This document shows, one piece after another, positions 4,935 to 64,000 of a DNA stretch of 64,000 bases. The stretch lies in the NCBI GenBank assembly GCA_024704765.1, contig JAKMXF010000322.1:186001-250000 (forward strand), in the 5' to 3' direction. Numbering within the stretch: position 1 is the stretch's first letter; the number at the start of each line of letters is the position of its first letter. The notes beneath the pieces were generated by a model that saw only the letters and a program-made list of their open reading frames with translations, searched no databases and was not told the DNA's origin. The DNA comes from Oopsacas minuta. Lineage: Eukaryota; Animalia; Porifera. A program made the translations under genes and the position numbers.

Positions 4935-4972
4935 TACAGGAAATAATCAAATTATACTGTGAGTAGCTATCA

Positions 4973-17388: not shown

Positions 17389-37928
<20,540 letters not shown>

Positions 37929-40026: not shown

Positions 40027-40525
40027 ATGGAAGATCAGAATTTTTTTAGGCGCTCGATTATTTCTCGATTATTTACACTTTTCTTATTGATATCACTCTT
40101 CTTCCCAACAGGTTTGTTTATTTTTTGTAGTATTATTTGTTTATTTTGTTTGCATTTATTTCTCTTTATAAACGCAAACGGACGCAATTTCATTCATATC
40201 AAAGTTCTGTTAGAAATAGAAAGAATCGGAAATTTAGAAATTCAGGGGTTCCTTGGAATCCTGAGAGAATAATTCAATGCAACCTCACAAACGGCCCTGT
40301 CGAAACGGAGTGAAAATTATTAGAACCAATACCTAGTCCCACTCAAATGAACCTCTACAAATCGAGTAGCATTTTCGGCGTCTCTGACACTCCATTTGCG
40401 GAGATGACACTGTAATAATCATAATTATCACGGAAATTTGGTATTTTCGAGTGTATTAGGATGAATTGAATGAAACCCAAGGAGAAACTATATCGAGCTG
40501 AATAGCATAATCTCCTACTTGTCTC

Positions 40526-40596
<71 letters not shown>

Positions 40597-43500
40597 CTAG
40601 TATGTCCTATACTTGTGGACCCTCCTACTGGTAATATAGAAGAAGGAGGAATTAGAACTTTCTTTCTATCGGTAAGTTAGTTTGCAACATTTGTATTTTT
40701 GTTTTCCGTTCTCAATAACTTTTAACGTTAAAATCGGTTGCTAATAGTAACACTATACAATAGAATTTTCTAGAACAAATAGAGCAATATAATAGCTGGG
40801 TGAAATATTCAGCGCCACGAAGTATATTTTATTCACTCAGATCCCCCGCGTCTACTGTCGCCTAAAATTTCTATATCGTCACATTTTGCAAATTCTCCAG
40901 TTTTTTGAGAGGCACCTAACCCTCTAACAACTAGAAAGATCCAAATGGGCTCACACACATACTTTGTATTAGCTTTATAGCAAGGTTGCAATCGAATAAT
41001 ATTTGGCGAATAGTTCAATATTCGGTTCAGCAACTATTCATGAATACTGATATTCGGTTCGCTCGGTTTCAACACCTTGCAGTATATAGCCATGTCTTCA
41101 ATAGTGTGAAGACATGGCTATATAATTCGTTGTTATTTGTATTTTATTCTCAATCATATTAATAGCCAGAGAATTTTCAAGCGACAGAAGGAGTAATTGT
41201 ATATGAGCTCGTATCCGGTAAGTATTTTAGGGTGAAACCTCGTTAATATTAATATGAATACCTACGGACGGTCAAATTCTCCGTAACTAACCCGAGTGAT
41301 ACCAATTATGTGTCCGCAAATTTCTACTAACCGTGTTCTTATTTACGAGGTTGCACTGTACCTAACGATACGTACGTTTATATTCATCAATATATTATTC
41401 CTTTCATCCGGTTAGCTACTCCTAATGTACCTCTGGTCACAGATTTCATTGGTCTCAGTAGTAACAGGCTAACTCTAGGCCCTTATGATTATGAAGTGTT
41501 CGTTAATACGAGTACTCCAGTTATAATTACTACAGTGGTAAGTATTATTCTTTAGAATTTTAATTTGTGTCTTTTGGGCCACAAAATCGACAACTTTCCC
41601 CCGGGAATGTTTGCATATTTGACAAATGAATTAGCAATCATTTATCCATCTTTTAGATAAGTGCAGTAGGAACATTGGGCTCGACAGATTTCTCAGGTTT
41701 ACAATTCACTTTACTGAATGTAAATGAGTTCCCTCCTATTGTCGCTCCTACAGTAACGTTTGAGCTTGATGAGAATCCTACTGATCCTATTGTAGGCACA
41801 ATAGCAGCTACTGATGGAGATGGAGGTTATTGTCTTTTATAGATTATATTTCATACGAACCTAGCGTTTTTCAATCAGTGGGGGTTTGAAAATCCTGGCT
41901 CAGGGACTGCCCTTGTCTCTATCCTTTTTCGAACTGCGGCAAACTTACAGTAGAAATTGTTTTTTTGCATTCCATCGGTTCGAAGTATCTAAGTAATTAT
42001 CGCGGTCCCTTGAGCTTCGACGAGAGTTGACTGTATTTTCAACACTTATCAAGGATTGATTCGATTTGGGAACAGTTTGTCTTTACACTCAACGGCCTTC
42101 TGGTGCAATTCTTTATGTTTCGTCTTTTAGATTTGCTTGAATGCTCTATTGATCCTTCAGCTGTAACTACTAACAATGTTCAGATCTTAAACATTTTCAG
42201 TTTCGCTACTGTATCTTGTGAAATGCGAATCAGTGATGCAGAACTTATCGACTATGAAACAGACATGACTTTAGTATTTGATGTGAGTTATTTACATATT
42301 TGTAATTTTGATATGTTTGTTTACCCCAGAGGTTCAGGAAGATCGTAGGAGTCCACAAGTGACACCCCCTATAACAATTTTAACACATTATGTGGACCCC
42401 CTGCTATCGTCCGTTAACCACCGAGGGGTCGATATGCTCAATGGGATAGAACGTTGAATTCCAGACTGTCGAATTTACAAATAGTTCTTCTAGGTAATTA
42501 TAACAGATGTAACAACTAATCCTATGAGTGCTGTCACTACTGTAACAGTCTTAGTATCTGATATTAACGATAATGATCCAATGATTATTAATAACAAGTA
42601 AGCTATTAGTGGGAGTGATCATAGATAGCGGATTAGTCTATTATGTTACAGCATAACAAACTCCTGTTACAACGAAGTTATTCTTTACTCCGAACACTTC
42701 TTAATAACGAGAGTTTCTGTGTATATATATATATTTCCCCGTCGAAACAAGCGAGGAATGCCTCAAAATGACAACATACAGGGCTTTATATTGAATATTT
42801 GTTGTTATTTACTTTATCATATAGCGAAACAACAAGAATCTCTAATAAGATTGGTGTTAGCGGCAACATTTTAACAGCAATAGCAGACGATAGGGACTCG
42901 AATGAGGCAGGACGATTTGAATTCAGTTTGGGAACTCAAACTAACGTGGATACATTAGACACTGTAGATGCTAATACTCAATACAATATTGATTCAGTTT
43001 CTGGTGTTGTGACTGCTGGACTAGCGGTATATAATCCTGGCAGCTATATGCTAGAAGTAAGTTATATTAAAAATTGAAAATTAGGAATACAGTAGAACGA
43101 TTAACCCATAGCTCTATTAATCGGAGTCCACTGTATTAACTCTTCGTTTGCTTGTGCTGCGCGGCTTGTGAACACTCATCTCCAATTACATATTTGCCAT
43201 CTACCAAATTTATTTACATTCTCAGATATGCAAATTGTACTGAGTATACACTCAAATGTGATACGTCAAGATATTTGACACCTATCTCAGAGAGTTTTTG
43301 AGATTTCTCATAGATATTTGAGATTGCACCGAGATGTATTATGTTCTACACTGATACTAAGTTTCAAGTTTGTAGCTCTGGCCAATTCTTCAATAATACT
43401 GTCATTCCTATATATAACTCCTGTTACTGATATTCGTTTAGATTTGTGTTGAGGATTTTGGAGTTCCAAGACTTATGAGTTGTGCAGAATTCGATCTACG

Positions 43501-46500
43501 AATTGAGTTAGCTAACGATAACGCTCCGAGCTTCACAATACTTCAGGGAGGAGCACCCGTCAATATTTCTGAAGTACCAGAAGAGACTTCTGATCCTGTC
43601 AATGCTGTGTTTATGATTCAAGTTGTGGATCCTGATGATGGTTAGTAAATGATAATTGTCCACCAGTGGACAATGTGGTTCGAAGCAGACAATTACAAAA
43701 TTCTAAGCGAATAAAGACATGCTGGATATAAGCACCGTCCACTGGAACCCGGTTCTCATATATTCCTGTATATTTATACCGGTTATAAGAACATGTATTG
43801 TTACTCCCAAGGGCGTTCTTATAACCTGCATACATTGTACTCCTATAGGAACCACAGGACAAGTTGACGTCACTGTAAATTTCTACACTTTCTCCTCAAA
43901 TTTCAGAATACAGGACCAATCACTTAATCAACAAGCTCCCTATAATATCAAAGTATTCGTGGATAGTGCTATTGACAGGGAAGCGCTGAGCTCTCCTCTC
44001 GATCTCATCCCATTCACAATTTCTGGTACAGATCGAGCGCTATTCCCTACAACGTTTGTACTTGATGCTAATATAAGTATTACAGATGTAAACGATTCTC
44101 CACCTGTGTTTATTAACACTCCTTATACTGTTATGGTGTCAGAAAGTGCACCTATCGGTTAGTTCCATAATATACGCTTTAAACAGCTGATACCGACAAT
44201 ATACATTCTGTAGTTATGTCAAACACGGAAATATAGAAGTATCCGCCTATATCGAAGTCTAAAATTGTACAAATATGGCCCCAAACCGTCAAAGTAGCAT
44301 ATATCCCACCGGTTATACCGAAATAATTATCACAGCCCTTTTGAGCTTTGATATAACGAAAGTTGAATGTATTATTATCCAAATTCAATTGTTTTAATCT
44401 GTTGTACCATTCTTGATTCAATTCTACAAACTATTCATATCTTTCCTTCTATTCTATTAGGCTATATATTCTTCAATGCAAATACTACTGACGAGGATAT
44501 CGGTGTGAATGCAGTCCATCAGTTCTCTTCTAATTCAACTGACATTGAGTTTGAGGTAATTCACTATATTTTCACACCTCTGGGTAACTCAAATTATCAT
44601 TTTGACATTCACATTATTCCCTTAGATTCACCCTAATGGATCAGTTTACATAGCTAGTGACGTCATAAGAGGTGTAGCTCCCACATATGATTTCTATATA
44701 TCCGCAGATGACGGTGCTTTCACTGCTATCACAAAACTTGTGATTAATGTTACAGAATCTAACGAATTTGCACCAACTTTCGTCACAAATGATTCTTCAA
44801 ATCTTTCCTTCCTTGAAAACGCTACTGTTTCAACCTTAATTGCATCTTTCAATATTTCTGATGAGGACTTTGGACCGTCAGGACAATTCAATGTTGTCAT
44901 TACAATGTCAGATGAGATATTTACTGTTAGTCAATCGTTTGGTGATAGAGAAGGTTCTTTTGCTGTGTATCTTGAGAATCCATTCAATTTTGAGGTAATT
45001 TAGATGTTTAGTTACACATAATACGTGGATATTCTCCAAAACGTTCCACATTTTCTTGAGGGAATTTTATGTTTACTGTTTACTCTCCAGACTTCAACAC
45101 AACACACTCTTGAAATAACAGCAACAGATTTAGGTGTACCCTCTAAACAAGGAACTATTACTTTCATAATTGACATATTTGATGTTAACGAGTTCGCTCC
45201 AGAATTTCAGAGTACTCCTTATATCTTTACTGCGCTCGCTCATTACAGCACTGGCACTTTCTTAGGTACATTCGTATATTAAAACTTTTCTGAATATGTT
45301 GAAAATTGGCTTGAAATTTTGTATGTGATAAAACCAGGAATAATTTCTAATATCTAACGGATATTTTCACTAATCTCTGAGAAAAGGTGACGAAGTGTTC
45401 TTTCCCATTATAAAACATTAGAAATAGTCTAACGTATATTAAGGAATTGGTAAGAGTTACAAACTTGAATTTTGCCTGAATGTAGAATATGACATATTAA
45501 GGTGTTGTTTCAAAACTCTCTGAATAGGTTACAAATATCTTGACCTATCAGATTTAAGTGTATGGTCAGTACATTTTTCCTGATAACCTCTTGGTGGTCA
45601 CGGACGACAGCAGGGGTCCACAGGATCTCAAATTTTGTATTAGAGTCTATGGGAGGGGTGCATTGAATGTGTTAAAATTGGTACAGGGGTCCTTTCCTTT
45701 TATTTGTGTTATTGTAATTATGGATATTTTCTTTATTCAGGTACTGTTCGTGCTATCGATCAAGATGGGACAACATCTATGGAGGATATTGCATACACAG
45801 TTATTGATATACCTTCAGAGTTCGATTTTCAAATAATAGCTGCTGCAGTACAGATTACAACTGCCTCTAGTTTTGGATCTGGAATAACTGTAATTATTAT
45901 TATAATAATATCTAAGATCAAAGGGCCTTAATAATCACTTCAATATAACCAATGACGTATATGTTACTTTGACAGTTTGGGATCATATGTGTATACTTTC
46001 ACACTTTGACATAAGCGTTGACTTACTATGCGGACTTTTGTACGAATTTAAGATCTAAGAAATTGAAATTTATATCCTATTTAGAATGAGAATTTCACTT
46101 TCACTGTGGTGGCAGAAGACAATGATCCTTTCGAACCTCTCAACACCTCCATCATAGTACAGATAAATCTACAAAACGATAATAACAATCACGCTCCAGT
46201 CCTAGGGCTTCAGAACTACTTTGGAAATATTCAAGAAAATGCAGCCGACGGTACGGTCATTTTCAATATAACAGCTACAGATGACGACTATGGATTGAAT
46301 CCTGAAGCTGGTACTATATCACAGTTTGAACTTGTTGGAGATCCAGCTGTTACCGGTTATTTTAGGACTGTTCTATATCCTCTTGATAATGGTGTGAGTA
46401 GAGGTGCTTTACTACTGAAGTAAGTTTATATTACACGTATTAGTATAAGAAGGGACGCCTTATCCCGTACAAGACTCCATTTTTATATTTGCTTTTCAAT

Positions 46501-49500
46501 TTTCTAGTGGGGATATTGATTATGAGATCATTCAATCCGCTCTCTTTTCTATAATAGCCATAGACACTAGCCCAAACAATTTAACTCCAAGGCGTAGTGA
46601 TGATAGTTCTGTCAGTATCATTGTTACCAATGTCAATGACAATCCTCCTATCTTTGAGGAAGACTTCTACAGTAAGTTATATTCAATTCAGTTTGTTTGT
46701 TGGTTTACTTGTTTACTTATTTATTACTTATTTATTTCCTTACAGCTGATACACTATTGGAGAACTCTGTCAATGGAACCCAGGTATTACAGGTAATAGC
46801 AATTGATGCAGACTACGACACAGTGAGTGCTGTATTCTTACCAGTTTATTCCATCATTTCTGATCCAGCTGTTCCATTCATTGTTGGACCTTCTTCAGGG
46901 ATAATTCTAGTTGATGGAACGATAGATAGAGAGTACACGTAAGTTCGCTGGTGTATGCTAATACAGTAGATGCCGGTTATAACCGGATATAAGCACCATC
47001 CTATTGAAACTGTTTCTCGTTAATTGCTGTATATTTATACCGGTTTATAGTATCACCCTTGGGAGTAGCATACAGGTTCTTATATGCGAAATGAATATAC
47101 AGGAATATATGGGAAATTGAGAACTGTTTTCTAGTGGATGGTGTTTATATCCGGTGTTCTTATAACTTGTATACACTGTAATTAAGCTTCTGTATTCACA
47201 CATTCAGATACACTACTTAATCTCTATCATATATTTAGACCCGGATACAACTTCCTTGTTAACGCATATGATGGTATACATACTGATTCCACAAACGTAT
47301 CAATATGGCTATTAGATGAAAACGATAATGCTCCTATATTTACTGTCGCATCTCCACTCATATTGAATGTTCTGGAAGAACAACCATTTGGCTACTTTAT
47401 CGCTAATATTACCGCAGATGATAATGACGCACCTCCACTCAATAATAAGGTTTGTATGGTAACTAATAAGCATGTTGGGGACCTGTTTTCTTGTTACAGT
47501 ATTTCTTCTCCCAATTCTTCTGTTGATTATTATTATTGTTGTTGTTTTCCTTATTAGATCCGTTTCAGATTTTTCCCATCTGGTAATGCAGAGTTCTTAT
47601 TAGAAGAATCAACTGGAGAATTAACAGGAATCAGGCAACTGGACAGGGAAGAATCTGATGAAAGATTGTTCAATCTTATGATTCTAGCTGAGGACGACGG
47701 ATCCCCTCGTCAGTCTACTACCCTAGACATACAGGTAATATTTGTTGTTATTGTATATCCTAGAATATACGCTCTGTCGAATACAGTCAACTCCTGTCAT
47801 ATCTAAGCTCAAGGGATCGTGATAATTACTTCGATATGTTCGGTGAAATATTTGTTACTTTTACAGTTTGGGGGCCATATTTGTACAATTCACACTTCGA
47901 TATAAGCGGGTATTTTGATATATCATTTATACCAAATACATTTATTTATTCCACTTCTACAGATAATTATTGAGGATATAAATGACAATGATCCATTCTT
48001 CGTTACAGTCAATCCTTACGGTACCATTCCTGAAAATGCAGCTTACAACACTACAATTGTCACAGTAGAAGCTAATGATCTGGACATAGAACAAAATGCA
48101 GAACTGACTTTCTATATTGACAACCAAGGTGTCATTTTTGGTGACCCATTCACACCTTTTGGTGTTGAGACTAAAGGCAATTTCGGTAGAATTTTCCTTT
48201 CAAATTCAAGTGGAATTGATTTTGAGACTCAGCGAAATTTCACTGTCCTCCTTCGTGTACAAGATAACGGTCCCACCCCTCGTTATTCACAGATTTCAGT
48301 TGCCATAGAGATCACTGATGTCAATGATAATGATCCCCAATTTCTTATGGAATTATATACTGCTATGATCCTTGAGACTGCCCCCGTCGATTCATTTGTT
48401 TCGACTGTAAGAGCGACAGACCGAGACTCAATTAACGTTGGTTTTGGCCATCAAATCCGTGGGTATTCTGTAGACTCATTTTTCTATATTAACTCTGCTA
48501 CTGGAGATATTTACCTACAAAGATTATTGAATCATGAAGATGCACACGAACATTACCTTGTAATTGAAGTATTTGATAACAGTGCTCCTTTAAATGTAAC
48601 TGACACTGCTAACTTGACTATTTCCGTTACAGATGTCAACGACTTGGAACCTTTTTTCCTTCCATTCCCAAGTCCAACTCTTGTCGAAGGTTCTTACATG
48701 GATCATTTGGTCGCTACTGTTACGGTTGTTGATTTTGATGAACTACATGTAGCGGAGGATGTAATCTTCCAACTTTTGAGTGAGGCTGATCGGTTTTATA
48801 TAATAAGTTTTCCTGACCCAACTAATTCTTCTGTTACTTTTGGGCAGCTTTACCTTAATGGATCGATTGATTACGAAACTCAACCGCTGATTTCTGTCAG
48901 TATTCGAGTCTTCGACGAGGCAGGCGTTAATCAACAAAGCCAAATTGATTCTCTGTTTATAACGGTTACAAATATTGATGATGAAGCTCCTGTCTTTGAT
49001 TTAGATCTTTACGAAGCGACTGTTTCTGAATTAGCTCCAGTGTCTACTAGCGTTATAGCTGTACATGCAGATGATCCTGATATCGGTGTAGTTCTAAATT
49101 ATAGCATATTCCTCAGACTTGTACCCTCAAATAATGCTCCATTCGCGATTATTTTACAATCTGGTCTGATTCAAGTTAGTTCAACTGGTGGTAATCCCCT
49201 TGATTTTGAGAGCATCAAGTTCTACACACTTGAGGTTAGTTATTCAGGAGATATAGTGTACAATCAATTCGAGCACTAACGGACGGGAAAGATTGTCCTC
49301 TTTCTCAATAGTAATATCGATTGAATATTTCAGTGGTAGGGACCTGATTTGTGTAAATATTTCGGAAATTCGAATTTCACCGTATTCGTATTAACGAGGT
49401 TCCATTGTATAGATTATATGTATACTTTGGACATGCCCGCTTCGATTAATCATATTTTCACACCTTTTTGTATGTTTCAAATTGAGACAATAGTTTCCAA

Positions 49501-52500
49501 CGGCAAAATACCTTTTTCTAGATATATGCACAAGATACTATGGGCACAACTTCCTCAACTATCGTGAACATAACAGTCATAGACGAGAATGACAATACTC
49601 CTGTATTCGAACAACCCATTTACAACGCTAGTATATTGGAGACTGCATTAGTCAGCACTTCTCTATTACCAGTAGCAGCTACTGACCTTGACGCCACCAC
49701 CAACGCTGATATCCTATACACAATTGAGGGAGGACTAGATAGCGATCATTTTACAATTATAGCTTTAACTGGTGAAGTATTCGTCGATGATGCGTTAGAC
49801 CGTGAGACGCGAGATCTGTACGAACTGATAATTGGCGCAGTAGATCAAGGAACACCACAACTCACCGGCACTGCTCATTTGAATATCTACATTTTGGATG
49901 CGAACGATAATAAACCAATTTTCACTCAATCTACTTTCTATGGAGAAGTCTTTGAGAATGAGGCGAATTTCAGTGTATTTATCCCTCTTGGAGGTGATCT
50001 CTTGATAACAGCCACGGACGCTGACATCGGGGAAAACGGAAGGATTGAGTATGAAATAGTTCAGAGCGATGATTTTAGAATTGTAACGGAATTTTTGGGT
50101 GGTGAATATGTTGGAATTATTGAGACAACGCGTAGGCTTGATAGAGAGTCTCAGGATCAGTATATTTTGACTGTTAGAGCTGTTGACGGCGGGGGATCAA
50201 CATCCGCGAATCTTCCACAAGTTGTAATCGATATTTTGGATCGTGATGACAGTATTCCTGTATTTGATGAGGATCTATATTTTGCCGATCTAGTGGAAAA
50301 TGGAAATGATGGAGAATTACTAGTGACTGTATCTGCTACTGAGTTGGATATTGGAGCTAATAATACGAATATTCAATTCAGGATTACTGATGTTTACAAA
50401 TTTTTTGGCGGTTTGTGTAAAATTAGAAATTCGCTTTACTTTTGCCGAGTTATTAACACAAATTATCGCATTTTCGATCATTTAGCATTCAAATTTTTGT
50501 ATGGCTAATACTTATTTGACACTTTCTGGCCATTTTGCACAATTTTTGGAGCATTTTTACTAATTTTCTCTTAGAGCCACTCATATACTTTCATGCTACT
50601 CCAGAGTATCCATTCAGAATAAACTCCACGACAGGCGAAGTATTCACAAATTCAAGCAATTTCGATAGAGAACAATTCGATCTTTACATAGTAAACCTCG
50701 AAACAACTTCCCAACTAACATTTGAACCTGAAAACACAAACACTGCAGTATTATTCGTTACTATACTTGATCTAAATGATGTCACTCCTATTTTCGACCC
50801 TGATACATATGATTTCTCCTTCAACGAGAATTCTCAAGAAAATTTCATAGTTGGACAAGTATTTGCATACGACACGGACTCACCAGGATCTCTAAACAGT
50901 TACATACGATTCTCCATTGAGTTTCCTAACATCAATTCAAGTTTAGAAGGTCCTTATCTTTCTATAGAAGAAATTACCGGTGAAATATACGTAACCAGTA
51001 ATCCTATTGACTACGAACTTCACTCCGATTTGACTGTAATCGTTACAGCTAGAGATCTTGGAAGTCCATCGCTTAACGTCACATTAGACCTACTTATTGA
51101 AGTAATAGATTTGAATGACAATTCACCAGAATTCAATGAAACTACATACACGTTTAGATTATTTGAGAATAGTCCGAATGGTACTGTTGTTGATCAAGTA
51201 TTCGCTTCTGATGAGGACGATGGGGAAAATGCAGAGTTGGTGTTCTCATTCCAAGTCGAAGATGTGAGTTAACTCAGTGGAATCTCGTAAATACGAATTT
51301 CTGGACAAGACGAACCAATTTTGACTTTCCTTTCGTATTTACCAGTTTACACTGTTTATAACAAACAAACAAACAAACGAATAAACAAACAACTTCACCT
51401 ATTCCCTTACTCTAGGCATCAAGACCATTTACAATGGATGCATCTACCGGAGTAATTACAGTGTCAGGAGATGTAGACAGAGAATCAACAGCTCTATGGA
51501 GTATCGGTATATCTGTAGTAGATAAGGGGGAACCTCCTCTTAGCGACGTAGCCCTTGTATTAATAACTGTAAGAGACGAGAATGATAATCCTCCTGTATT
51601 TCCTGTCGCGTCCCTTAACGTATCTTTTTCAGAGACAGCTGAGCAGTTGACTGTAGTTACAACTGTGCAAGCTGTTGATCTTGAAGATGTAGGAGAGAAT
51701 CAAGTTATCTACTATACAATACCAGTACATTATCCGCTACCTTTTAATATCGACCGTAATTCCGGTAGTATCTATCTGAACGGTTCTATTGACTACGAGG
51801 TTACTCGCTTCTACATGTTTACAGTCTATGCTAATGATGATGGTGTTAACACGCTAAACGACTCGATAACAGTTCGTGTAAATATAATTAATGAAAACGA
51901 TAATACACCAGAATTCGAGTTACAAGCTTACGAGCATTATTTATTTGAGAACGCATCGATAGGGGAAGTACTCAGTATTTCTATAATGGCAACTGACCGT
52001 GATTCTACTTCACAAGTCCCCGTCAAACTAACCTATTTCATAGTTGGTGGGTCAGATAATAGGTTTAATATTGATCCAGATTCGGCGGTTGTCTCTGTTG
52101 CTGGTGCATTGGATCGAGAAACTATCCCGGAATATTTGATTGATCTTGAAGTACGGGATAGTTCAAGGACAGGAAGTGCAACCTTACGTATTATCCTGCG
52201 TGACGTCAATGAAGCAGGGCCTAGATTCAATTCTACGACTTATATCGGTTATGTACCTGAAGATGCGGCGGTTGGGAAGTTCGTTATTGCAATCGAGGCG
52301 ACTGATTCCGAATTTTCCGACCCAATCGATTTTATCCTCACCGTAGATGGTAACGGCGATTTTGCTATTGTTTCAAACATTACAGACCCTTCACTACCAT
52401 TCGACACGATTGCTCATTTGCTAGTAAACAATACACTTGATAGAGAAACCAGAGATGTATACGAATTGTCTATTACAGCTATTGATTCTGGTAACCGGCG

Positions 52501-55500
52501 TTCTGTTTCTCCCATTACAGTTAATTTATTAGATGTCAACGACAATCCTCCAGTATTTGTTGAAAATCCTGACGAGACAGCTAACGTGACATTCTTCACC
52601 AAATGTAGTGTATACTCTAACCCATACAACTTATCCTGCTATTATATTCAAATACAGGAAACCGCATCGCCTGGACTAATTCTAACCGTTTTCACAGAGG
52701 ATGAGGATCTCGGTGCAAATGCTGAATCAACTTATTCAATTGGGTCACATAACGGTTCAATGTTCCGTATTGTTTCTGAAACGGGCCAGCTGTTTAATGA
52801 TGAAGCATTTAATCATGAGATAGACCACCAACACGTTATTCATGTGACAGCCACTAACGTGGGAACACCTCAGCTAGCTTCACGCGTCATTGTTGTTGTT
52901 GATGTCCTCGATGCTAACGACAATAAACCTACTTTTGACTCTATTGTATACAAATTTTCTGTTTACGAAAACAATGCGTTGGATCCGGATGATCCAACAA
53001 ATAAACTAGTAGGCGTTGCCAATGCAACAGATGCAGACGATGGTCCTAACGGAATGTTGAGTTATGAGTTTATTTCCGGGAATACTAAAGACTTTTTCAC
53101 AGTTGTTGATGGTATTATACGAGTCACGGACACAATTGACAGAGACACACTTTTCGAGGACACTTTTGATTTAATTCTACAAGCAACAGATGGCAATCTT
53201 GCAAATCAACAGACCGGAACAACTCGAGTTCTCATAACTGTATTAGATGTTAATGACAATATACCATCATACCCTGGAGACGAATATGTTGTTCTCATTG
53301 ATGAGGAGATTCCGTTAAACGAAGACATATCAATCGGAGGGCTGATAGCTACTGATCCTGATCTAGGTGCTAATGGGACTATATACTATAGTCTGAGTAA
53401 TGTGACATACTTCGAAGTAACAGATGATGGAAAGGTTCAGCCTGTTAGGAGACTAGACTACGATACTATTCCTCTGGTGAGTACTTACCTTGTTTCTGCC
53501 AAACTCCCAGTTTGTAGTAATATCACTGTATTTCCCTCATCCTATCCAGTATATGATAAATATTTAATTCTTACAATTCTATAGTTACAATCAACTGTCG
53601 TCATAATCCTCACCGTTACAGATGGAGGCAGTCCACCCCTATCATCAAGCACAGTCCTCACAATCAGGATTAGTGACATGAACGACAACGGCCCTGAATT
53701 CCTACAAGACCCCATCTCCTTTGATGTCAATGAAGCTACTGCATCTGGGATGGTTATTAGAAACCTAGCAGATGATGTTTCTGATATTGACTCGCCAGCA
53801 AATTCTGTTATGCAATTCTATATCATAGCTGGAAGTGCTGGACTATTTGAATTGAGTACAATGGGAAATTTGACACTAATAGCCACCCTTGATAGAGAGA
53901 ATAGTCCTACACACGAATTGGAAGTACTAGTGCAGGATGCACACTTAAGCATTGAATTTACTGATCGTGCTCGTTATACTATCACAGTAACGGATAATAA
54001 TGATAATACTCCTATGTTCTCACAGCCGGAATATACTATTCCTGTAAGTTGCTTTATTATTATAATTGGTGGCTTAATAGATCAGCTATTCCAAATCCGT
54101 TGCCCCCTGCTGTCCTCCGTGGACAACCAAGGGGTCAATGAGCACAGGTTGGGGAATCGCTCCGTTTGATTGACTAATATACCGATTACAGTGTAACTCG
54201 AATAATCCTTCTTCTTCCCATATGTTTAATATCATAATTGATAATACATTACTACTGAGTTCTACTATATTCACATACCAGGTTCTAGAAGACACTCCCT
54301 TGAATACAGTAATCTTCCAATTCACAGCATCAGACGATGACTTCGGCTTAAACGCTCGAATAACCTACTTCATAAACGATACAGATATAATGCCTGTATT
54401 CCGTGTGCTGAAACAGAATGCTACGATGATATTGACTTCTCAGCTTGATTTTGAGGGTCCTAACAAATCGTATGTATTCTACGTATATGCTATAGATACT
54501 GGGAATAGGACTGGGAGAGCTCTGGTAACTGTTGACGTGAATGATGCTAACGATAATCCACCTTTTATAGAATGTGAGTACATTTATACTAATTTACTGA
54601 TAAATTGAGGAATTTCAAATATGTTTTAGTACCTGTTAATTAGGGCTTGAAATCCCGGGATCCCGATGCATTTTCCTCCGGGATTCGTCTTTCAATCCCG
54701 GGATCCCGAACTTGTATAAGTTAGTTGTTCTCTTTTGTAAGTGCAATTGGCTTAACTTCAGTTACTATGAAACTATTCTCATTTTCATTATTATCGAACT
54801 GGATTGAGCGACAGGACTTTGAATACTCTGTTTCATTAGAAATAACAAATATAGATAATAAATAAGATAGGCCAAGTTCATTATTATATTCCATATATTC
54901 CATATCTTGTGTGTAAATGCAGCAAAGCTTAACTTCATTCAATAAAATAAACCTTACGTATTATATAATTGTAATAATTATTATTCCCGAAATTCCGGGA
55001 TTACAAGCCCTACTGTTAATATATCCACATATTTAACTCATATCCTCTTCCCCCTAGCTACTCCATATTTGATTACGGTATGCGAGAATTCTACACAACC
55101 AGGAATATCATTCTTCCAAGTATTAGCTACAGACAACGATTCTCCTCCCAACAATCAATTACAATACAGCATAGACGAGACATCCGGGCCGTTCGAAATT
55201 AACCCGAACACAGGCGTGATTTCATTCACCGGTCTGATAGACTACGAGACGATAATTATGATACCTATTCCTGTAACAGTCACTGACGGAGGTATCCCTG
55301 CGTTGGAGACTAACACAACCGTGACACTTGAGATATGTGACAGTAATGATAACAAACCGTTGTTCAGTCAGGATAATTACGGAAATGTTGAGATTTCTGA
55401 GGAATTTACTCCTCCTATGGTTATATTTAATTTTATTGTGACTGATGCTGATTCGGGAGAGAATGGAGAATTTGAAGTTTATATTAACAATGCTTTTCCT

Positions 55501-58500
55501 ACAGGATGTGAAGTGAGTTTGATAATTATTGTAGATTTTACCGAAATGTTGCCTTCGAATTTTGTCAATTCAATTCCCTAAACCGGCGATTTTTGAAAAA
55601 TTTCCCGGATTTCCAAGTTGTATATCCTGAAGTAGCAATTCAGACTATTCTTTAGGGGAAAAGTGTACAGAAATTTCAATTTCTGGATAATAAAAGCACG
55701 TTCTTTACTTATTTTTCTATTATTAGTCACTCTACATAATCAGTGGACAATCTGTCGTATTGAACGCTTCTATAGACTATGAAGGTGATACCCCTAGGAA
55801 TTGTCTACTAGAATTGTTATCAGTTGACAACGGCACCCCTCAATCGCAACTTGATACCTCAAGAGTTGAAATTGAGATAGTTAATCATAACGATAACGCA
55901 CCTCAATTCGTGGTAATACAAGATGCAGACATCCAGGAAGATGCCACCGTGGGAGCGTTTGTTACATTCGTATCTGCTTCTGATGTTGATCCAGATGATG
56001 AACTAGCTTTCTCTATTCAGAATCCTACAGGATCTTTTGTGATAGATAGTCTTACTGGTATCATAACTACCAACAGGTTAGTTTGGTATTTTTATCATTA
56101 ATATGCTTGGAATTCTATTGGGATGCATTCGTATTAGACTAGGAATTCGCTCTATTCATTTTCCTTATTAAGGAGGTTACCCTGTCAAGCCTCAATTAAC
56201 CTTCTTTGGCAATTATCTCAAATTTGTATACTTTCTATTCTAGAACATTCGATTACGAGGTTGAACAAGACAGAACACACGTACTAACAATATGTGTTGA
56301 AGATTCCGGATCTCCCCAACTCATAGTTTGCCAAAACCTAACCGTAGCAGTCACAGACATTAACGACAATCCTCCTGTATTCCTACCCAATGACGTCTAC
56401 AAGATAAATGTATACGAAAATACTTTTACGGGAACAGTATTAATCGACGTATCCACATCAGATGCTGATACACCTGCTAATTCAATTGTAGAATACTCAC
56501 TAGTTGCTGATAACGTAAATCCTCTTGAAGACGACAGTCGTTCATTCTTTATCAACAGTGTTACCGGAGAAATCACTCATTTAATTGTCTTTGACAGGGA
56601 AATGAAGGGTTATTATGAATTCCCTATACGCGCCCGTAACGGTATACTAACTACAGAAGCTACTGTAATGATCAATCTCCTCGATAGAAATGATCATATC
56701 CCAGTCGTGAGTCAACCCTCTCTTTTCGCTGAAATCCGAGAGAACGCTACTGCCCAGACTACAGTGGGAATGATCGAAGTAATGGATGCAGATATAGGTA
56801 CAAATATGAATATATCATTTAGGTTTACAGGGGGAGATGACGGAGATCTCGGATCTTTTGCTATCAGTAACAATGGTCGTGTGTATGTGCAGTCTGCTTT
56901 GAATTTGGATTATGAGGAACAGGATCTTTATCTGATTAATGTAAGTACATTTCTCTTATTCATTGTGTGGTTGTACCAACGGTTCTGCAGCGGGGGCGTT
57001 AGATTATATATTACACTAAAGTTGATATTTTCAACACCGAATATAAGCACCATCCTCTGGAGAACGGTACTCATATATTCCTGTATATTTAATACCGGTT
57101 ATAAGCACATGTATTGATACTCCCAATGGAGTTTCTTATCACCTGTCTCCACTGTATTTCACACCTATAGCAGTGGACCACTTTTACCATTCCTTTTTGG
57201 TAACCAACTAAATACCATACTCCCTTATAGGTAACTATCCAAGATCGTAGCTTCATTCCCATCAGTGAAACTACCCTGGAAGATGATGTCATTTACAAGA
57301 ACTCTACAATGATGGAAGTTATCAACACCGTATATGTTATATACGCAATACAGCTGATAGATGTTAATGATAATACACCTGTGTGTAGTAGCCCGTTATT
57401 TCCAGGATTACTGACTGAATCAACTGTGAATGTGAAAATCTTAACTGTACGCGCTACGGATCGAGATGGTGATGGGTCACAGAATATTTTATTTGTGATT
57501 GAAAACTCCAACGATTCGACACCATTCGTGATTAATAGCAATAATGGCGAACTTTCCAATGAGATTTCTCTTGATTTGGAAGTTCAAGAGGTTTATGAGT
57601 TTATCGTGTTGGCTATTGATCAAGGAATACCTCCGATGAGGACTGCTTCTTGCAATGTAAGTAATTTCCATAAATTCCATGTTTTACGCTTTGTAACTAT
57701 GATAGTCAGATGGGTTAATATCCCACATATGGATGTTGTCTGGACATTCTTATGCGTAATTTTCTATAATACATCGTAGAATCAGTGAATTTGTAATTCA
57801 AATGACCAATTCCTATAGATTCAAGTTACCATAACAGATCTTAACGATAACTTCCCTCAATTCGATACAGCTGAATACTATTTCAATATTTCAGAGAGTA
57901 TAGATCTAGGTGGAAGAGTAGGTGATATATTTGCTACTGATGAAGATGCTGGTATAAATGGACAAGTAGAATACTTCATTGAGAGTGGAAATGACGACGG
58001 ACACTTCGATATTGATAAAGAAACTGGCTATTTGACTCTAATAAAATCTGTTGACTATGAAAATATCTTCCAGCAGTCTTTCAAACTCCTAGTTTCCGCA
58101 GCTGATCGCGGATCTCCTTCTCTACAGAATAGAACTGATGTTAACATTAATGTACTAGATTTCAATGATAATCCTCCTATAGCAATAGACACTGTTGGTA
58201 GGATAGATGAGAATGCAACTGACGGTACAATAGCTGCTATGCTAACTGCTACTGATGCTGATTCAGGAATTAATAGACAATTGAAATTCACGTTAGTTGA
58301 TTTTACAGAATATTGACATACAACTGAACCTACATAATTCTCGTGTATTTGCATTGTCCAAAATTCATTTGGGCTGTAAACACGGTCTTCTGTATTATGT
58401 GGTTCACTGTATGTGAGGAGTTATTAACTGGTTATGTCATTTAGTATTGTAAGCAATTACATTATATCCACCATTCATGATAAAGTTCTTCTGAACAAAT

Positions 58501-61500
58501 ATTGTGCATTTCTTCTTCTACACTGTTAATATTATTATTTGTATATTTTTAGGCTATTTGGAGCTGGAACACAGTTTACTGTCAATCCAATGACAGGAGA
58601 CGTGAATCTAACAAATTCGTTATTTTTTCCGCTTGACTACGAATACATTCCTTCTTATCAATTCACCTACCAGGTTTGTGATCTAGGAGAGATTTCTCTT
58701 TGCTCAGAAATCAGATCTCTAACCATCTACATCAACGATATAAACGACAATGAACCTGTATTCACAAATGGAAATCAAAACACAAGTCTTATGGAATCTC
58801 TCTCAGTTTCCTCGCTTATATTTACAATGATGGCAACTGATGCAGATTCAGGAATAAATGCTGAATATCGTTTCCAGCTAATTACACTAGATCCGTTGTT
58901 TAGCATAGACTCTGTTTCCGGTCAAATTAAGCTGACACAATCGTTGGATTTTGAGGTTAAGCGAATACATGTTCTCACAATCCTTGTCTATGACCTTGGT
59001 TTCCCGAGACTGTCTACTCTCACAAACTTCACAGTATATGTGTTGGATAACAACGATAATGCCCCAATATTTGACCCTCCTGCCTATGCTCCAATGATTC
59101 TTGAAAACCGTTTAGAAGGCTTTATCGTAACAAGAGTACACGCCACTGATCGTGATCATCTCGAGCATATGAACTTAGAATTCACGCTTATGGATGATCC
59201 TACTGATCCTGGGAAGTTTACATTGACAAAGACAAATGCTACCTCTGCTGTTATTACTGTTACTTCAACTCTACCAGCTCTTGACAGAGAGACACAAGCC
59301 CAGTATGAGCTATTTGTTATAGCTACTGATAATATCAATGTAGCGTCACCGGATACTGATGATATTAGGCTATCTGCCAGCGCACAGGTTCGTATTATAT
59401 GTATGTATATGTGACTCTCCATAATCGTAGTTCCAGAAGGGACGCTGAAGAATTGGGACTTATAATTCGCTCTATTCATTTTCAAGAAGTTCCCGTTTGT
59501 GGATGTTACACTATAGTGCAATTTGAAATGGATAACGATCCAGTCTACTCCCGTTATATCGAAACTCAAGTAACCACAATTATTACGATATTCCCTGTTA
59601 GGTATAACAGGAGTTGACTGCATTTACTTCCATATGGGAGTAGATGGTTGTATCAGTCAATTTTGGTCTTCTAATTTTCATCTATTTCTATTGATTTAGG
59701 TTTCGATCACACTTCGTGATGTTAACGACAATAACCCCACTCTATCAACAACATCTGAGACTATCGCAAGAGCAGAAACATCTACTCTTAACGTTATATA
59801 CTTCACCTTCCAAGCCTTCGATATAGATATAAACAACACACTCTACTTTGATATAATCACTGGAAATGAAGATAACAGATTCGAACTATTTGTTCTCCAA
59901 CTAAGCGATGATACATACACGATTAATGTACAGAACATTGAAGTTATAGACTTCAATGATCAAGTGATGTACAACTTTACAATTCGTGCTACGGACGCTG
60001 GATATCCACCCTTCTCCACAGATCTAAATTTAATTATCCAATTAGGAGATATCATTAATAAGCCACCGATATTTAACCAAACTTTCCAAGGAATGGTCCT
60101 TGAACATTCCGGTCCAGATGTATCTGTTGCTCAGCTGATTGCATTTGATGATGACACTATTGACTCTAATGATACGCTTGTTTATAGGTTAGTTTTGATT
60201 GTGTTTTGTTTATTTCTATAGCTGAACCTTTGACTATAGAATATATATCCAGTCATCTCCCGTTATATCGAAGCTCAAGGATCCGCGATAATTAATTCGA
60301 TCTAACCGATAAATTTATGCTATTTTTAGACTTCTATATAAGCAGATATTTTGATATATCCGTGTTTGATTTAACGGGAATTGAATATATAGTGAAACTT
60401 ATCTACAGCAGATACTTGAAAATCTCTTTATTCCAAACTCAAATATGACAATGATTTATTGTTCAATTCTTTAGTATTGCAACTAACCCCTACTTCGGTA
60501 TAAACCCACAAACAGGAGAAGTATTCACAAAATCCTCACCAATAGACAGAGAAACAGATCCTATCTTCAACGTTACTGTATCAGTACGAGACGCAGCCGG
60601 TTTCAATGATCAAACTGAACTCAGTATTTGTGTATGTGACATTAACGATCATTCTCCAGTATTCTCAGCATTTGATTTGACATACAGAACAACTATTGAC
60701 GAGGTGTTAGCAGCAGGACATACCTTTTATACTTCTATATCAGCAGATGATGCTGATGAGAAGCCTCACGAAAGTTTAGGATGTGGATGTCCGATTACGA
60801 ATTACGCAGTTCTGGAGTATACGAGGACTGCTGGCGACGACAACGGCCGATTCTACATTGAGGGAGAAACAGGTAATTTTGTATTTCTTTCTTTAGAGAC
60901 TTATTTCGTGCCTACGTTTCCATTCCCTAATTTTGTGATGTGATACATACAAGTCTACGTATTTTCAATAATATATTTCTAGCTGCTCTTCGCGTATCAA
61001 CATACGAAGCCCCTAGCTCAGAATTCATCTACGTGGACAATACAGTGTATCCTCTCTGTGAATCCCAGGCAGAAAATGTATACACTTTGGACATTTTGGT
61101 AGTCGACGGTGGCACTCCACCACGTAACCACACGAGTCAAGTACTAGTGACTGTTAATGACGTCAACATATACACCCCTGTGTTTGAGAAGGCATCTTAT
61201 GTCAGTCTAGTGGATAAGGATTCATTAGCAGGTAAAACTGGACACTTTATCCACCTATTTTAGTGGAATACATGTTTTGAGGAGGCTAGGTTTGACCTTC
61301 AGGCAAAATGTCGAAAATATTTCAACACTTTTGCCTGTGTCGACCACAATTTGAATAGTGGCTAAGTATTGAAATTGTTTTTTCAGTTTTAAGGTTGTAG
61401 CATATTCTCTATCCTATTTTAGGCACTATCGTTATACCACAGCTCTTTTCATCAGATGCAGATTTGTGTAGTGATAATACTGTTGAGTATTATTTCGAAG

Positions 61501-64000
61501 GACACTTTGCTCAGAGCGGTCCCTTCCAGATCGACCCCTCTAGCGGAGAGGTTACTCTAGCGATAGATCTTCCCTCTGATCCTCTGTCCTACACTACAAC
61601 CTTAGCTGTAGAGGATAGATTAAGCCCAGTAGCTACGCATCTCACTGGCACAGCGCAACTTACTGTGATTATCGGGGAACTACTCCCTATTGACTTTGAA
61701 GTGTCAAATGGATATATTGTACCTCCTCTATCTCGAACTACTGATACTGAATTCAACCAAGGTCAGTTATATACAACAAAATCGTAACATTTCATATTGA
61801 CATTATCCTTGAAAATGTCGACAAATTTACTGAACCGACTATAGTGGCTCAGTATTGAAATGCGTGCTTCAATGTCTCCATGATGATGCACAGCAAACTA
61901 TAATAGATTAAGGGCTGAAGCTTTCAGGGCACGAGGACAATTATCGTCTGGTGGGCACCAGGTGTACAATTCTTGATCTGACACAATTTGCCATTTGTTT
62001 ATATTATAATCTTGTAGATTTTTGGTTACCAACTGGACAAGACACTTACGCTCACACCGATCTCACTTTCTCAATCGGGAGCCTCACAAGCACGTCCACA
62101 TACACAATTAATCCCGGTGTTGCCACCCACTTAGAAAGTATCATAATCACCCAATGGGTGTCTGTCAACAATCGTGATGTACGTGTAGTTTTGCAGGCCG
62201 CAAACGATAATGATCAGACCAATATTGATCCCGCAACAATTCGAGTAGAAATTGATAGCCTAATAGACACTGTACCTTCAATTACAGGTGTTTGCACAGT
62301 CAGCATTCCATCTGGCATTTGTTCAATTGTTCTTACCTTCCCTGAAAGTTGGCTATCCTCTCTAACGGAGGATTATCCTTACGCTATCTTGGTATCAGCC
62401 CAATTATTTGATTCATTAACTATTCTCGGTCTTATTGATGCTCGTTATGAGGCTAGCTGTCCCTTCAATAACAATGTGTTCATCCACGTGCCGACATATT
62501 CGCAGTTTTCAGGTTCATATGTATATATCCCTGTATATGGCAGAGCAACTGAAGGCATCAATAGCTATAGTATTGAGTTTTGGGATAGTTACTTATTGGA
62601 ATTCGAAAGAGTTGAAAATTCAGAATATTTCATCTCAGAAGCAACTCTTGATTCTACCATTAGCGGTCATTTTTTCGTGTCAGGATCTACAACACGATTC
62701 CCTATACAAGAAGGGACCATGGATTTACTGTTTACGGTTGTGTTGAAAGTACTCTCTTACAGTGAATGTCGAGATGAAACTTTGACTGCTCAAGTTATCT
62801 TCCTATCAGATGGCCTACAACAATCTGTAAGTTTATATTCGTAAATATTTTGGCGGGGTTCCATGAGTGAAAAGTTAGGGGACGACAATCCCGATTGAAA
62901 TACTTTTATTTTTAATATTTCACACATTTTTTGATAGCTTAACTTACCAATTCTAGAATTTTCATAATTTATATGTGTTATCCTATATTTGCAAGGTTAT
63001 TGGCAATGGAGCTGCTGCAGTTCATTACCCAACCTGTGGGACTAGCAGTTCAATTCGTGTCTGCCCGGATGATTCCCTAATATTATTCCCATATCTAACA
63101 TCTACTACACTTATCAACACAGAGAATATCGGCATACCAACGTCACCAACTCGCATCTATCTAAAGTCTGCTCTAAAGAGTGGTAAAGTTGTTGATGCAA
63201 ACGCTACGAATTGTTTATCTAGTGCACCTGGTGTTGCTGACTTATCAGCTGACTGTAAATGGGTAAGTTATATTACTGTTACATATTCTACAGATTGTCA
63301 CAACAATTATATATATTCCTATTTAGCTTACTTTCTCGAAAGCTCACAGTCAAGGAGCAGATAACTTCTTGCTAACTATTGAACAAGATAGCTTAACCAC
63401 AAGCATAACATTGGATATATGGTACCCACGATCTGTTACATACACAGATCAAAAGCAGGACGCATTAATCACAGACCCAGGAGCACAAGGTCGTAAACTA
63501 GTGCAGGGATACAGCACGTCCACCTGTGGTCTTGGCTACCAATCGCCAGAAATCTACGTTACAGCCGAATTCTGTGACGGATCATTTCTGAGTTGTCCCC
63601 ATAGACAGAATCTAGACATATCCCAGCTAGTACAGGATAGTATTACTTCGGAAGACGCCAATATACTTGACACAGTCAATGTGGGAGCTAGCATATACCT
63701 AGAGGTTTATCAACAAGGAGAAACTGGATTAGAACTCACTAATAGTCCAACGCATCGCATAACATTGAGCACAACTGGTAGCGTGACAACACAGGTCACA
63801 GATTTGGACGTACGCTTCTTTACTTCAATACAATCACTGGCTCCTGATTCAACTAATGCTACATTACTCGAGGCTACTGTTCAGCTAGCTACAGACTTTA
63901 CTATCCCTTATACACAGGCTATTGTTGTAGTGGATGCTGTGTTTGATGACGGATCTCGCATGAATCTTCGACCCGAACATGGCTTGGTTCTGTCATCAAC
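40027..64000 (+). CDS. Giant multi-exon cadherin (~41 EC repeats) with a C-terminal TMEM132-like module (coherin-type); 3'-incomplete
   Basis: The signal-peptide exon 40027-40111 (RLFTLFLLISLFFPT) splices in phase to 40601-40671, 41166-41217, 41416-41537, 41657-41825 and onward. I counted 40 DxNDxxP-type linkers by eye, along with LDRE/DYE and ATDxD motifs, up to ~61670. The exons at 62018-62826, 62996-63262 and 63327-64000 are non-cadherin. I did not phase-check every internal junction. Confidence 0.92.
40508..40593. repeat. (ATT)n microsatellite directly before a cadherin splice acceptor
   Basis: A perfect ATT run ends a few bases before ctag|40601. Confidence 0.97.
46964..47179. mobile_element. 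Family A MITE, complete copy
   Basis: TA-CAGTAGATGCCGGTTATAA ... TTATAACTTGTATACACTG-TA, within a cadherin intron. Confidence 0.75.
54641..55012. mobile_element. 372-bp non-autonomous hAT element with a perfect 8-bp TSD
   Basis: CTGTTAAT|TAGGGCTTGAAATCCCGG ... CCGGGATTACAAGCCCTA|CTGTTAAT. The TIRs match at 17 of 18 bases, with subterminal atcccggga repeats. Confidence 0.92.
62018..64000 (+). other. TMEM132-like extracellular module (conserved region, cohesin domain and Ig-like domains) of the cadherin
   Basis: Motifs occur in TMEM132 order: CTVSIPSGICSIVLTFPESWL, NNVFIHVP...IPV, LINT...CLSSAPGVADLSADCKW, ITLDIWYPR, CGLGYQSPEIYVTAEF, LDISQLVQD, VTDLDVRFFTSI, AIVVVDAVFDDGS. The final exon 63327-64000 is open to the edge and missing from the ORF track. 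Confidence 0.8.

What the first reader, a model, noticed from the sequence alone, without database searches (positions are those of the whole stretch)
40027..64000. Giant cadherin fused to a complete TMEM132-like (cohesin plus Ig) ectodomain
After ~41 cadherin repeats, the same reading frame continues into a module that follows TMEM132 motif by motif. Examples: CxxSIPSGICSIVLTFPESW versus CRLxGxLGLCVAELELxSSW; ITLDIWYPR versus LEMTVWVPR; CGLGYQ versus CTLQYQ; VTDLDVRFFTSI versus ITDLGVQLVTGL; VFDDGS versus QFSDGS. Cadherins with cohesin domains ('coherins') are known from choanoflagellates and sponges, and TMEM132 is known to carry a cohesin domain. This gene would link the two families in one surface protein that may be the ancestral form of TMEM132 (inference). 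Its ligand and role are unknown.
Basis: partly seen in the sequence, partly recalled or inferred. Interest (0 to 1): 0.82.

Follow-up and report, generated by a model that had tools for sequence, protein, structure and literature searches.

The report
Sponge giant cadherin with TMEM132-type cassette
A giant cell-adhesion gene really does run, in one spliced message, from about 40 cadherin repeats into a block of five domains built like the outer part of TMEM132, but this layout was already published for sponge and choanoflagellate cadherins, so it is a new member of a known kind.

Summary
The + strand carries about 40 cadherin repeats (42.5-61.7 kb). Spliced contigs of run X4 join the last cadherin exon (61423-61761) in frame to exons 62018-62826, 62996-63262 and 63327-64000+. 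These encode an Ig-like domain, a cohesin-fold domain (top ten solved matches all cohesins, Z 10.3-12.5) and three BIG/Ig domains. The exon-D model best matches chordate TMEM132C/D models (TM 0.72, against 0.38 for generic Big_2). Direct Pfam hits in the window are below threshold, but relatives found with profiles of these exons carry the Pfam TMEM132 2nd-6th domains at the same places; the 4th and 5th score well above cutoff.

In two orthologous loci the block is not a terminal ectodomain. About 400 more residues, a cohesin, dibasic sites, a dockerin and more cadherins follow, and the unit then recurs. In all long relatives the order is TMEM132-type block, cohesin, dockerin, up to four times.

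Sanchez-Pulido and Ponting (PMC6030884) already reported all five TMEM132 domains, in order, inside coherin, lefftyrin and hedgling cadherins. Other notes of this scan describe the same cassette in this gene beyond the window and in another gene of this genome. Verdict: real, not new; interest is low to moderate.

The parts
40027..41656 (+). Unverified.
   Evidence: The translation is shown. No Pfam family, and no Hedgehog-N or VWA domain, was found in the open stretches between 40018 and 43642. No RNA was laid on this part.
41657..61231 (+). Multi-exon array of about 40 cadherin (EC) repeats.
   Evidence: Pfam Cadherin E 4.7e-79 (51416-53581, 7 stretches) and 5.7e-40 (47906-49276). 31 linker motifs on + and 0 on minus. 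About 37 repeats by a local HMM. Spliced joints 59385/59698, 60184/60472 and 60870/60981 in X4 contigs.
61423..61761 (+). Exon A: the last, divergent cadherin-like repeat, bounded by phase-1 introns.
   Evidence: Pfam Cadherin E 1.9e-4, below cutoff. Local cadherin HMM iE 3.7e-5. Joints 61231|61423 and 61761|62018 in X4 contigs. 35-37% identical to the orthologs.
61762..62017 (+). Phase-1 GT..AG intron between the cadherin array and the cassette.
   Evidence: Splice sites read. One X4 contig (record 26) skips it and carries 191 nt of exon A plus exons B, C and D.
62047..62457 (+). Exon B, first domain: Ig-like beta-sandwich, equivalent to the TMEM132 'conserved region' / Pfam Ig_TMEM132_2nd. 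It holds the C..SG.C...P..W motif.
   Evidence: AlphaFold model pLDDT 88. Macroglobulin/filamin/intimin-type sandwiches at Z about 10. Ig_TMEM132_2nd found in 8 of 27 aligned relatives, best E 4e-4. Invariant C92, G99, C101.
62461..62826 (+). Exon B, second domain: cohesin-fold domain, equivalent to Pfam TMEM132_3rd.
   Evidence: The top ten solved-structure matches are all cohesins: Z 10.3-12.5, rmsd 2.4-3.0 over 109-118 residues. The profile hits R. flavefaciens ScaB cohesins at E 2e-4. TMEM132_3rd found in 10 of 27 relatives, best E 3e-6.
62996..63262 (+). Exon C: linker plus most of BIG1 (Pfam Ig_TMEM132_4th), with the conserved cysteine pair.
   Evidence: The spliced C+D profile aligns to P0014 623-889 (iE 4e-18) and P0012 523-794 (iE 2e-18), over their Pfam 4th-6th domains. 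Conserved C...dC columns. Joints at both ends in X4.
63327..64000 (+). Exon D, running off the window: end of BIG1 (to about 63434), BIG2 / Ig_TMEM132_5th (about 63432-63776), and the first half of BIG3 / Ig_TMEM132_6th (about 63789-64000).
   Evidence: Ordered Pfam hits to the 5th (E 0.024) and 6th (E 0.01) domains, below cutoff; E about 1e-3 in both orthologs. 5th found in 12 of 14 and 6th in 10 of 14 aligned relatives. The model's best atlas matches are chordate TMEM132C (TM 0.72 and 0.71 over 201 residues) and TMEM132D (0.69). The X4 contig runs 488 nt past the window.

Best explanation
The region encodes the N-terminal part (about 4,900 residues) of a giant, probably type I membrane, coherin-type cadherin.

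Shown: about 40 EC repeats are spliced in frame to the first copy of a TMEM132-type cassette. The cassette is an Ig-like 'conserved region', a cohesin-fold domain and three BIG/Ig domains. The window ends inside the third Ig domain.

Shown in orthologs and relatives: the cassette is the front half of a super-cassette of about 1,300 residues. The super-cassette continues with more Ig-like sequence, a canonical cohesin, a short linker with dibasic sites and a dockerin. It alternates with short cadherin blocks up to four times. Complete relatives end in one TM helix.

Inferred: the protein is a long calcium-stiffened adhesion filament. The cadherin blocks give reach and homophilic or heterophilic contacts. 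The TMEM132-type blocks act as rigid beta-sandwich spacers and protein-binding platforms. The cohesin-type domains are the likely docking sites for dockerins of the same or a neighbouring molecule.
For: Transcript continuity: seven GT..AG joints in X4 contigs, including 61761|62018, with frames agreeing.

Cohesin fold: Z up to 12.5 with all top ten matches cohesins; PDB cohesin sequence hits at E 2e-4.

TMEM132-type Ig triplet: atlas TM 0.72/0.71/0.69 to chordate TMEM132C/D against 0.38 for Big_2; language-model score 0.94 to clusters carrying Ig_TMEM132_4th/5th.

Homology by profile: the exon-B profile finds 47 proteins in 1.84 billion (12 at E<1e-10), including Monosiga brevicollis XP_001743798. 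All 13 scanned carry Pfam TMEM132 domains and/or a Cohesin domain (Monosiga: Cohesin only), and in 11 Ig_TMEM132_4th scores above cutoff just after the matched stretch. The exon C+D profile aligns over their 4th-6th domains. Member scans: 2nd in 8/27, 3rd in 10/27, 5th in 12/14, 6th in 10/14.

Orthologs: L001 and L002 keep exons A-D. Identity is 35-37% in the cadherin exon, 49-51% in exon B and 57-64% in exons C-D, so the cassette is the more constrained part. Cohesin, dibasic sites, dockerin and cadherins follow.

Architecture: the order is invariant in all long relatives. A C-terminal TM helix is present in five relatives.
Against: Direct Pfam hits of the window's own sequence are below the gathering cutoffs (15-16 bits against 28), and exon B has none.

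The two-domain exon-B model matches the chordate TMEM132A model only at TM 0.46.

What follows the window comes from orthologs at about 50-64% identity and from untested scan notes, not from this genome's own sequence.

The gene's start, its end and its TM helix were not seen. No binding partner, cleavage or localisation was tested. All functional statements are inference.
Confidence: 0.85

Rival explanations
1. Two genes: a cadherin gene ends near 61761, and a separate TMEM132-like gene starts at about 62018.
For: Pfam sees no cadherin after 61761 in the window. The last cadherin repeat is weak (E 1.9e-4).
Against: An X4 contig splices 61761 to 62018 at GT..AG, in frame and in phase 1, and carries exon A plus exons B-D. 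A second contig joins exon A to the upstream cadherin exons. Exon B has no start codon or signal peptide of its own at 62018. Orthologs and all long relatives have cadherins on both sides of the cassette within single ORFs.
Confidence: 0.02
2. A true TMEM132 ortholog with an N-terminal cadherin extension: the block is the membrane-proximal ectodomain, followed by a TM helix and a WIRS/PP1 tail.
For: Domain order and fold match TMEM132. The window ends before the issue can be seen directly.
Against: In L001 and L002 the exon after exon D continues the third Ig domain and then about 400 more extracellular residues. After that come cohesin, dockerin, seven cadherins and a second cassette. No relative found here has a TM helix directly after the Ig triplet. 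Scan notes s1-266703 and s1-266774 report more cassettes beyond this window (untested).
Confidence: 0.03
3. Generic cohesin plus Big_2 beads with no specific kinship to TMEM132. The similarity would be fold-level convergence or chance.
For: The window's own Pfam TMEM132 scores are sub-threshold. The solved-structure matches are bacterial cohesins and LigA/LigB Big_2 domains.
Against: Atlas matches to chordate TMEM132C/D cover 201 residues across domains at TM about 0.7, against 0.38 for Big_2 clusters. The only Pfam families recurring in relatives are the five TMEM132 domains, in TMEM132 order, some far above cutoff (80, 76 and 62 bits). The family-specific cysteine pattern is present. The same kinship is published (PMC6030884).
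Confidence: 0.07

Closest known systems
Coherin-family cadherins of choanoflagellates and sponges (Abedin & King 2008; Nichols et al. 2012, as cited in PMC6030884)
   Same: Giant proteins with many EC repeats plus cohesin domains. They carry the five TMEM132 domains in the same order (PMC6030884, section 2.3 and Fig. S2 legend). A Monosiga brevicollis protein is a significant relative of exon B (E 8.5e-15).
   Different: This is an undescribed gene. It has about 40 N-terminal EC repeats and, judging from orthologs, several cassettes, each followed by a cohesin-dockerin pair. The held text and supplement of PMC6030884 do not mention a dockerin partner in these proteins. The original coherin definition could not be read here.
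TMEM132A-E (metazoan single-pass adhesion proteins; Pfam PF23481, PF23039, PF16070, PF23486, PF23487)
   Same: The same five ectodomain modules in the same order, the same conserved cysteines, and predicted structures that superpose (TM about 0.7 for the Ig part).
   Different: TMEM132 has no cadherin repeats and one copy of the block, followed at once by a TM helix and a WIRS/PP1 tail. Here the block is internal, repeated and followed by a cohesin-dockerin pair. The window's sequences do not reach the Pfam cutoffs.
Bacterial cellulosomal and non-cellulosomal cohesins (e.g. 2w1n, 2vo8, 1ohz)
   Same: The nine-strand jelly-roll fold of exon B residues 148-269 (Z 10-12.5, rmsd 2.4-3.0). There is a weak but significant sequence-profile match (E 2e-4).
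   Different: 11-20% identity, no Pfam PF00963 hit for this domain, and a eukaryotic adhesion context. Dockerin binding is untested.

Membership tests
TMEM132 family | Five ectodomain modules in the order conserved region (2nd), cohesin-like (3rd), BIG1-3 (4th-6th) | tested here: met
   Shown by structure, by transitive profile homology and by member scans. The sixth domain is cut by the window end.
TMEM132 family | The window's own sequence reaches the Pfam gathering scores of the TMEM132 domain models | tested here: not met
   5th domain 15.2 bits (cutoff 28) and 6th domain 16.2 bits (cutoff 27.8). No hit for exons B and C.
TMEM132 family | Four conserved cysteines: a pair in BIG1, one in BIG2 and one in BIG3 (PMC6030884) | tested here: inconclusive
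   Three are in the window on conserved columns. The fourth lies on a conserved column in the next exon of the orthologs, beyond the window end.
TMEM132 family | A single TM helix and a cytoplasmic tail (TMEM132_C, WIRS/RVxF) directly after BIG3, with no cadherin repeats | tested here: not met
   About 40 EC repeats precede the block. In the orthologs, Ig-like sequence, cohesin, dockerin and cadherins follow it.
Coherin cadherins | Cadherin (EC) repeats in the same polypeptide as cohesin domain(s) | tested here: met
   The EC array and the cohesin-fold domain are joined by spliced contigs. Canonical Pfam Cohesin occurs in the relatives P0007, P0014, P0018 and P0008.
Coherin cadherins | Host is a choanoflagellate or a sponge | not tested
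   The run's organism is coded. Other scan notes call the genome a glass sponge; this was not checked here. A Monosiga relative exists.
Hedgling cadherins | N-terminal Hedgehog-N signalling domain and a VWA domain before the cadherins | tested here: not met
   No Pfam family in nine open stretches between 40018 and 43642. Caveat: the true N-terminus is unverified.
Lefftyrin cadherins | C-terminal LamG/EGF/FN3 region and a tyrosine-phosphatase domain | not testable with these tools
   The C-terminus lies beyond the window, and the genome's own downstream sequence could not be fetched.
Cohesin (PF00963) as a dockerin receptor | Calcium-dependent binding of a dockerin on the cohesin beta-sheet face | not testable with these tools
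   Only the fold and the presence of dockerins downstream in orthologs are shown.

The most novel reading that the evidence does not exclude
TMEM132 may be the surviving front half of an older super-cassette of about 1,300 residues. In every long relative found here, from Monosiga to the sponge-type giants, the TMEM132-type block is followed at a fixed distance by a canonical cohesin, a dibasic linker and a dockerin. The 'orphan' cohesin-like domain of TMEM132 may therefore once have worked with a dockerin supplied in cis. If so, this protein would offer a natural system in which to find what a TMEM132-type cohesin binds. The one paper I could read on the family (PMC6030884) does not mention dockerins in these proteins.
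Probability: 0.2. Interest if true: 0.6.

Novelty: new member of a known kind. Interest (0 to 1): 0.3.

Why it matters
The finding confirms, with transcript, profile and structure evidence, that the TMEM132 ectodomain plan exists inside a giant early-animal cadherin. It corrects the picture of where the block sits: it is internal and repeated, and in relatives it is always coupled to a cohesin-dockerin pair. It adds no new principle, because the cadherin-TMEM132 link was published in 2017. Its practical value lies in annotating such giant genes and in giving a natural context where the unknown partner of the TMEM132-type cohesin-like domain could be sought.

Tried and rejected
- Direct Pfam scans of exons B and C gave nothing useful. 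MPTase-PolyVal (E 0.015) and DUF4841 (E 0.11) are taken as chance.
- Foldseek of the two-domain exon-B model against the PDB gave only generic tandem beta-sandwiches (integrins, complement) at TM about 0.27. This was uninformative until the domain-wise VIA search was run.
- The exon-D profile against PDB sequences gave no significant hit. No TMEM132 chain matched the exon-D profile in the PDB sequence search.
- The word-based protein search found only two ortholog ORFs, because of its length limits.
- No run is labelled RNA. X4 nevertheless holds spliced contigs.
- The window's own ORFs are not in the protein collection, so the window could not be extended. Orthologous loci were used instead.
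- Nichols et al. 2012 and Peer et al. 2009 are not held. The coherin definition is therefore taken second-hand from PMC6030884.
- A search for hedgling N-terminal domains was negative.
- No phylogeny against bona fide TMEM132 was built, because no such sequences were fetched. The 'ancestral form' idea is therefore left untested.
Full report
**What is in the window.** The window is AT-rich eukaryotic DNA (GC about 0.35-0.40) with short introns. On the + strand the cadherin linker motif D.[ND][DE]..P occurs 31 times between 42560 and 60638 and never on the minus strand. Pfam Cadherin scores E 4.7e-79 (seven stretches) on 51416-53581 and 5.7e-40 on 47906-49276. An HMM built from the window's own repeats gives 46 full or intron-split hits, about 37 repeats from 43878 to 61667, plus two or three weak ones upstream. 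The proposed start at 40027 has a hydrophobic N-terminus but is unverified. No Hedgehog-N or VWA domain lies between it and the first repeats.

**Gene model at the 3' end.** Reading the DNA gives these exons...-61231, 61423-61761 (the last, divergent cadherin repeat), 62018-62826 (exon B, 270 aa), 62996-63262 (exon C, 89 aa) and 63327-64000+ (exon D, 224 aa in the window). The introns flanking the cadherin exon are phase 1 and the two inside the block are phase 0, so the frame is continuous.

No run is labelled RNA. However, the contigs of run X4, unlike those of X1-X3, skip every one of these introns at GT..AG, along with three more upstream. One contig carries the end of the cadherin exon, exons B, C and D and 488 further bases. 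Another contig joins the start of that cadherin exon to the upstream cadherin exons. About 50 bases inside that uninterrupted exon are not covered by the listed contigs. All four runs come from one sample and study.

**Exon B.** Pfam finds nothing in exon B, and the word-based search found only two orthologous ORFs at about 50% identity. A profile of the three orthologs (A2) was searched against 1.84 billion representatives. It found 47 proteins at E<1e-3 and 12 at E<1e-10. Many are 3,000-8,000 residues long and contain two to four copies. One is Monosiga brevicollis XP_001743798.

An AlphaFold model built on a 27-sequence alignment (A3) has pLDDT 88 and shows two beta-sandwiches.
- Residues 148-269: the ten best solved matches are all cohesins (Z 10.3-12.5, rmsd 2.4-3.0, 109-118 aligned). 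The profile also hits Ruminococcus ScaB cohesins by sequence (E 2e-4).
- Residues about 30-146: these resemble macroglobulin, filamin and intimin Ig-like domains (Z about 10).

The best atlas match of the whole model is a chordate TMEM132A cluster (TM 0.46). Scanning the 27 aligned members one by one, the only recurring Pfam families are TMEM132_3rd (10 members, best E 3e-6) and Ig_TMEM132_2nd (8 members, best E 4e-4). The invariant columns are C92, G99, C101 and P158, with P108 and W111 nearly invariant.

**Exons C and D.** Exon D gives ordered but sub-threshold Pfam hits to Ig_TMEM132_5th (E 0.024) and 6th (E 0.01). Both orthologs give the same pair at about 1e-3. A local profile of spliced C+D from the three species aligns end to end with P0014 623-889 (iE 4e-18) and P0012 523-794 (iE 2e-18). 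Those stretches are where Pfam places the 4th, 5th and 6th domains; the 4th and 5th score well above cutoff (80/76 and 43/62 bits) and the 6th about 25 bits, just below cutoff.

Of 14 aligned members, 12 hit the 5th domain (best E 3e-18), 10 the 6th and 7 the 4th. The exon-D model (pLDDT 73) matches chordate TMEM132C clusters at TM 0.72 and 0.71 over 201 residues and TMEM132D at 0.69. Generic Big_2 clusters reach only 0.38. Among solved structures the best matches are Leptospira LigA/LigB Big_2 domains (Z 6.4), the same fold that PMC6030884 reported for TMEM132. The language-model search agrees (0.94 to clusters with Ig_TMEM132_4th/5th).

Three of the four conserved TMEM132 cysteines are in the window. 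The fourth lies on a conserved column of the next exon in the orthologs.

**What follows the window.** The genome's own downstream sequence could not be fetched. Two orthologous loci from ENA assemblies (L001, L002) keep exons A-D. Identity is 35-37% in the cadherin exon, 49-51% in exon B and 57-64% in exons C-D, so the block is more constrained than its cadherin neighbour.

In those loci, exon D is spliced (phase 0, GT..AG) to an exon that finishes the third Ig domain and adds about 350 further Ig-like residues. The next exon encodes a cohesin, a linker with dibasic sites, a dockerin (Pfam E about 3-5e-3) and three cadherins. A single exon of about 3,900 residues then brings four more cadherins and a second cassette.

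**Architecture of relatives.** All fetched proteins were mapped with local HMMs, whose placements agree with Pfam Cohesin and Dockerin where Pfam sees them. The order is invariant: TMEM132-type front (2nd-3rd, then 4th-6th), a cohesin about 700 residues later, and a dockerin about 160 residues after that. The unit repeats up to four times between blocks of 3-7 cadherins. An example is P0011 and P0036 (7.9 thousand residues), which share the ortholog pattern of cassette, seven cadherins, cassette. Five complete relatives have one TM helix near the C-terminus. The block in the window is therefore an internal cassette, not a membrane-proximal ectodomain.

**Comparison with what is known.** PMC6030884 (Sanchez-Pulido and Ponting) defines the TMEM132 ectodomain as a conserved region, a cohesin homologue and three BIG domains.

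The gene fits the coherin description (EC repeats plus cohesin domains). It lacks the hedgling N-terminal domains in the stretch examined. It fails the TMEM132 family definition on three counts: cadherin content, internal position and lack of an adjacent TM helix. The paper says dockerins are undetectable in vertebrates and does not mention them in the premetazoan proteins. The fixed coupling of the cassette to a cohesin-dockerin pair may therefore be less well known, but I could not read the primary cadherin papers.

Other notes of this scan already describe the cohesin-dockerin cassettes just beyond this window, four TMEM132-like modules in this same gene, and the same cassette in another giant gene of this genome, which they call a glass sponge. 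I used these notes as leads only. The ortholog and architecture results above partly confirm them. The organism was not checked.

**Mechanism and verdict.**
- Shown: one transcript; about 40 EC repeats; an Ig-like domain, a cohesin-fold domain and a TMEM132-type Ig triplet.
- Shown in relatives: repetition of the cassette, coupling to a cohesin-dockerin pair, and a C-terminal TM helix.
- Inferred: a long calcium-stiffened adhesion filament in which the cassettes serve as rigid spacers and docking platforms, with the cohesin-type domains as candidate receptors for dockerins in cis or trans.

The 'ancestral form of TMEM132' idea remains untested. The phase-1 intron at the front boundary of the cassette is also compatible with exon shuffling. 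The finding is real and well supported, but it is a new member of a known kind.

Noticed in passing
L001:13652-14350 and L002:13991-14700 (orthologous loci, about 2 kb past the equivalent of the window end): A cohesin domain, then a linker of about 25-40 residues with dibasic sites (RRSV and RRTR in L001; RRSV and SRSKR in L002), then a dockerin with two calcium-loop repeats. Cadherins resume immediately afterwards. This matches scan note s1-266703.
   Followed up: partly
P0007-P0047 (relatives); map: In every long relative, including a Monosiga brevicollis protein, the TMEM132-type block is followed at near-constant spacing by a cohesin (about 700 residues after the Ig triplet starts) and a dockerin (about 160 residues later). 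This super-cassette of about 1,300 residues repeats up to four times.
   Followed up: partly
window 4635-4937, 23641-23796, 38233-38350, 43720-43840, 46985-47152, 57041-57156: An interspersed repeat of about 115 bp (76-91% identity), several copies as inverted pairs, lying in introns of this gene and of upstream genes. It looks like a MITE or SINE. Its translation creates spurious open frames.
   Followed up: partly
window 60185-60471 (intron): Contig depth rises about 8-fold to 20-fold over 60156-60339 in the DNA runs, with many 31-33-nt contig fragments. The intron shows weak similarity to other introns in the window. It is probably a high-copy repeat.
   Followed up: partly
L002:9330-9990 and other introns of L001/L002: Long trinucleotide (TGT/TGC/CTG-type) microsatellites fill several introns of the orthologs. 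They produce poly-Leu, poly-Cys and poly-Val open frames that gene callers may pick up.
   Followed up: no
window 61762-62017 and 61232-61422: Both introns flanking the last cadherin exon are phase 1, while the two introns inside the cassette are phase 0. The phase-1 boundary at the front of the cassette fits insertion by exon shuffling.
   Followed up: no
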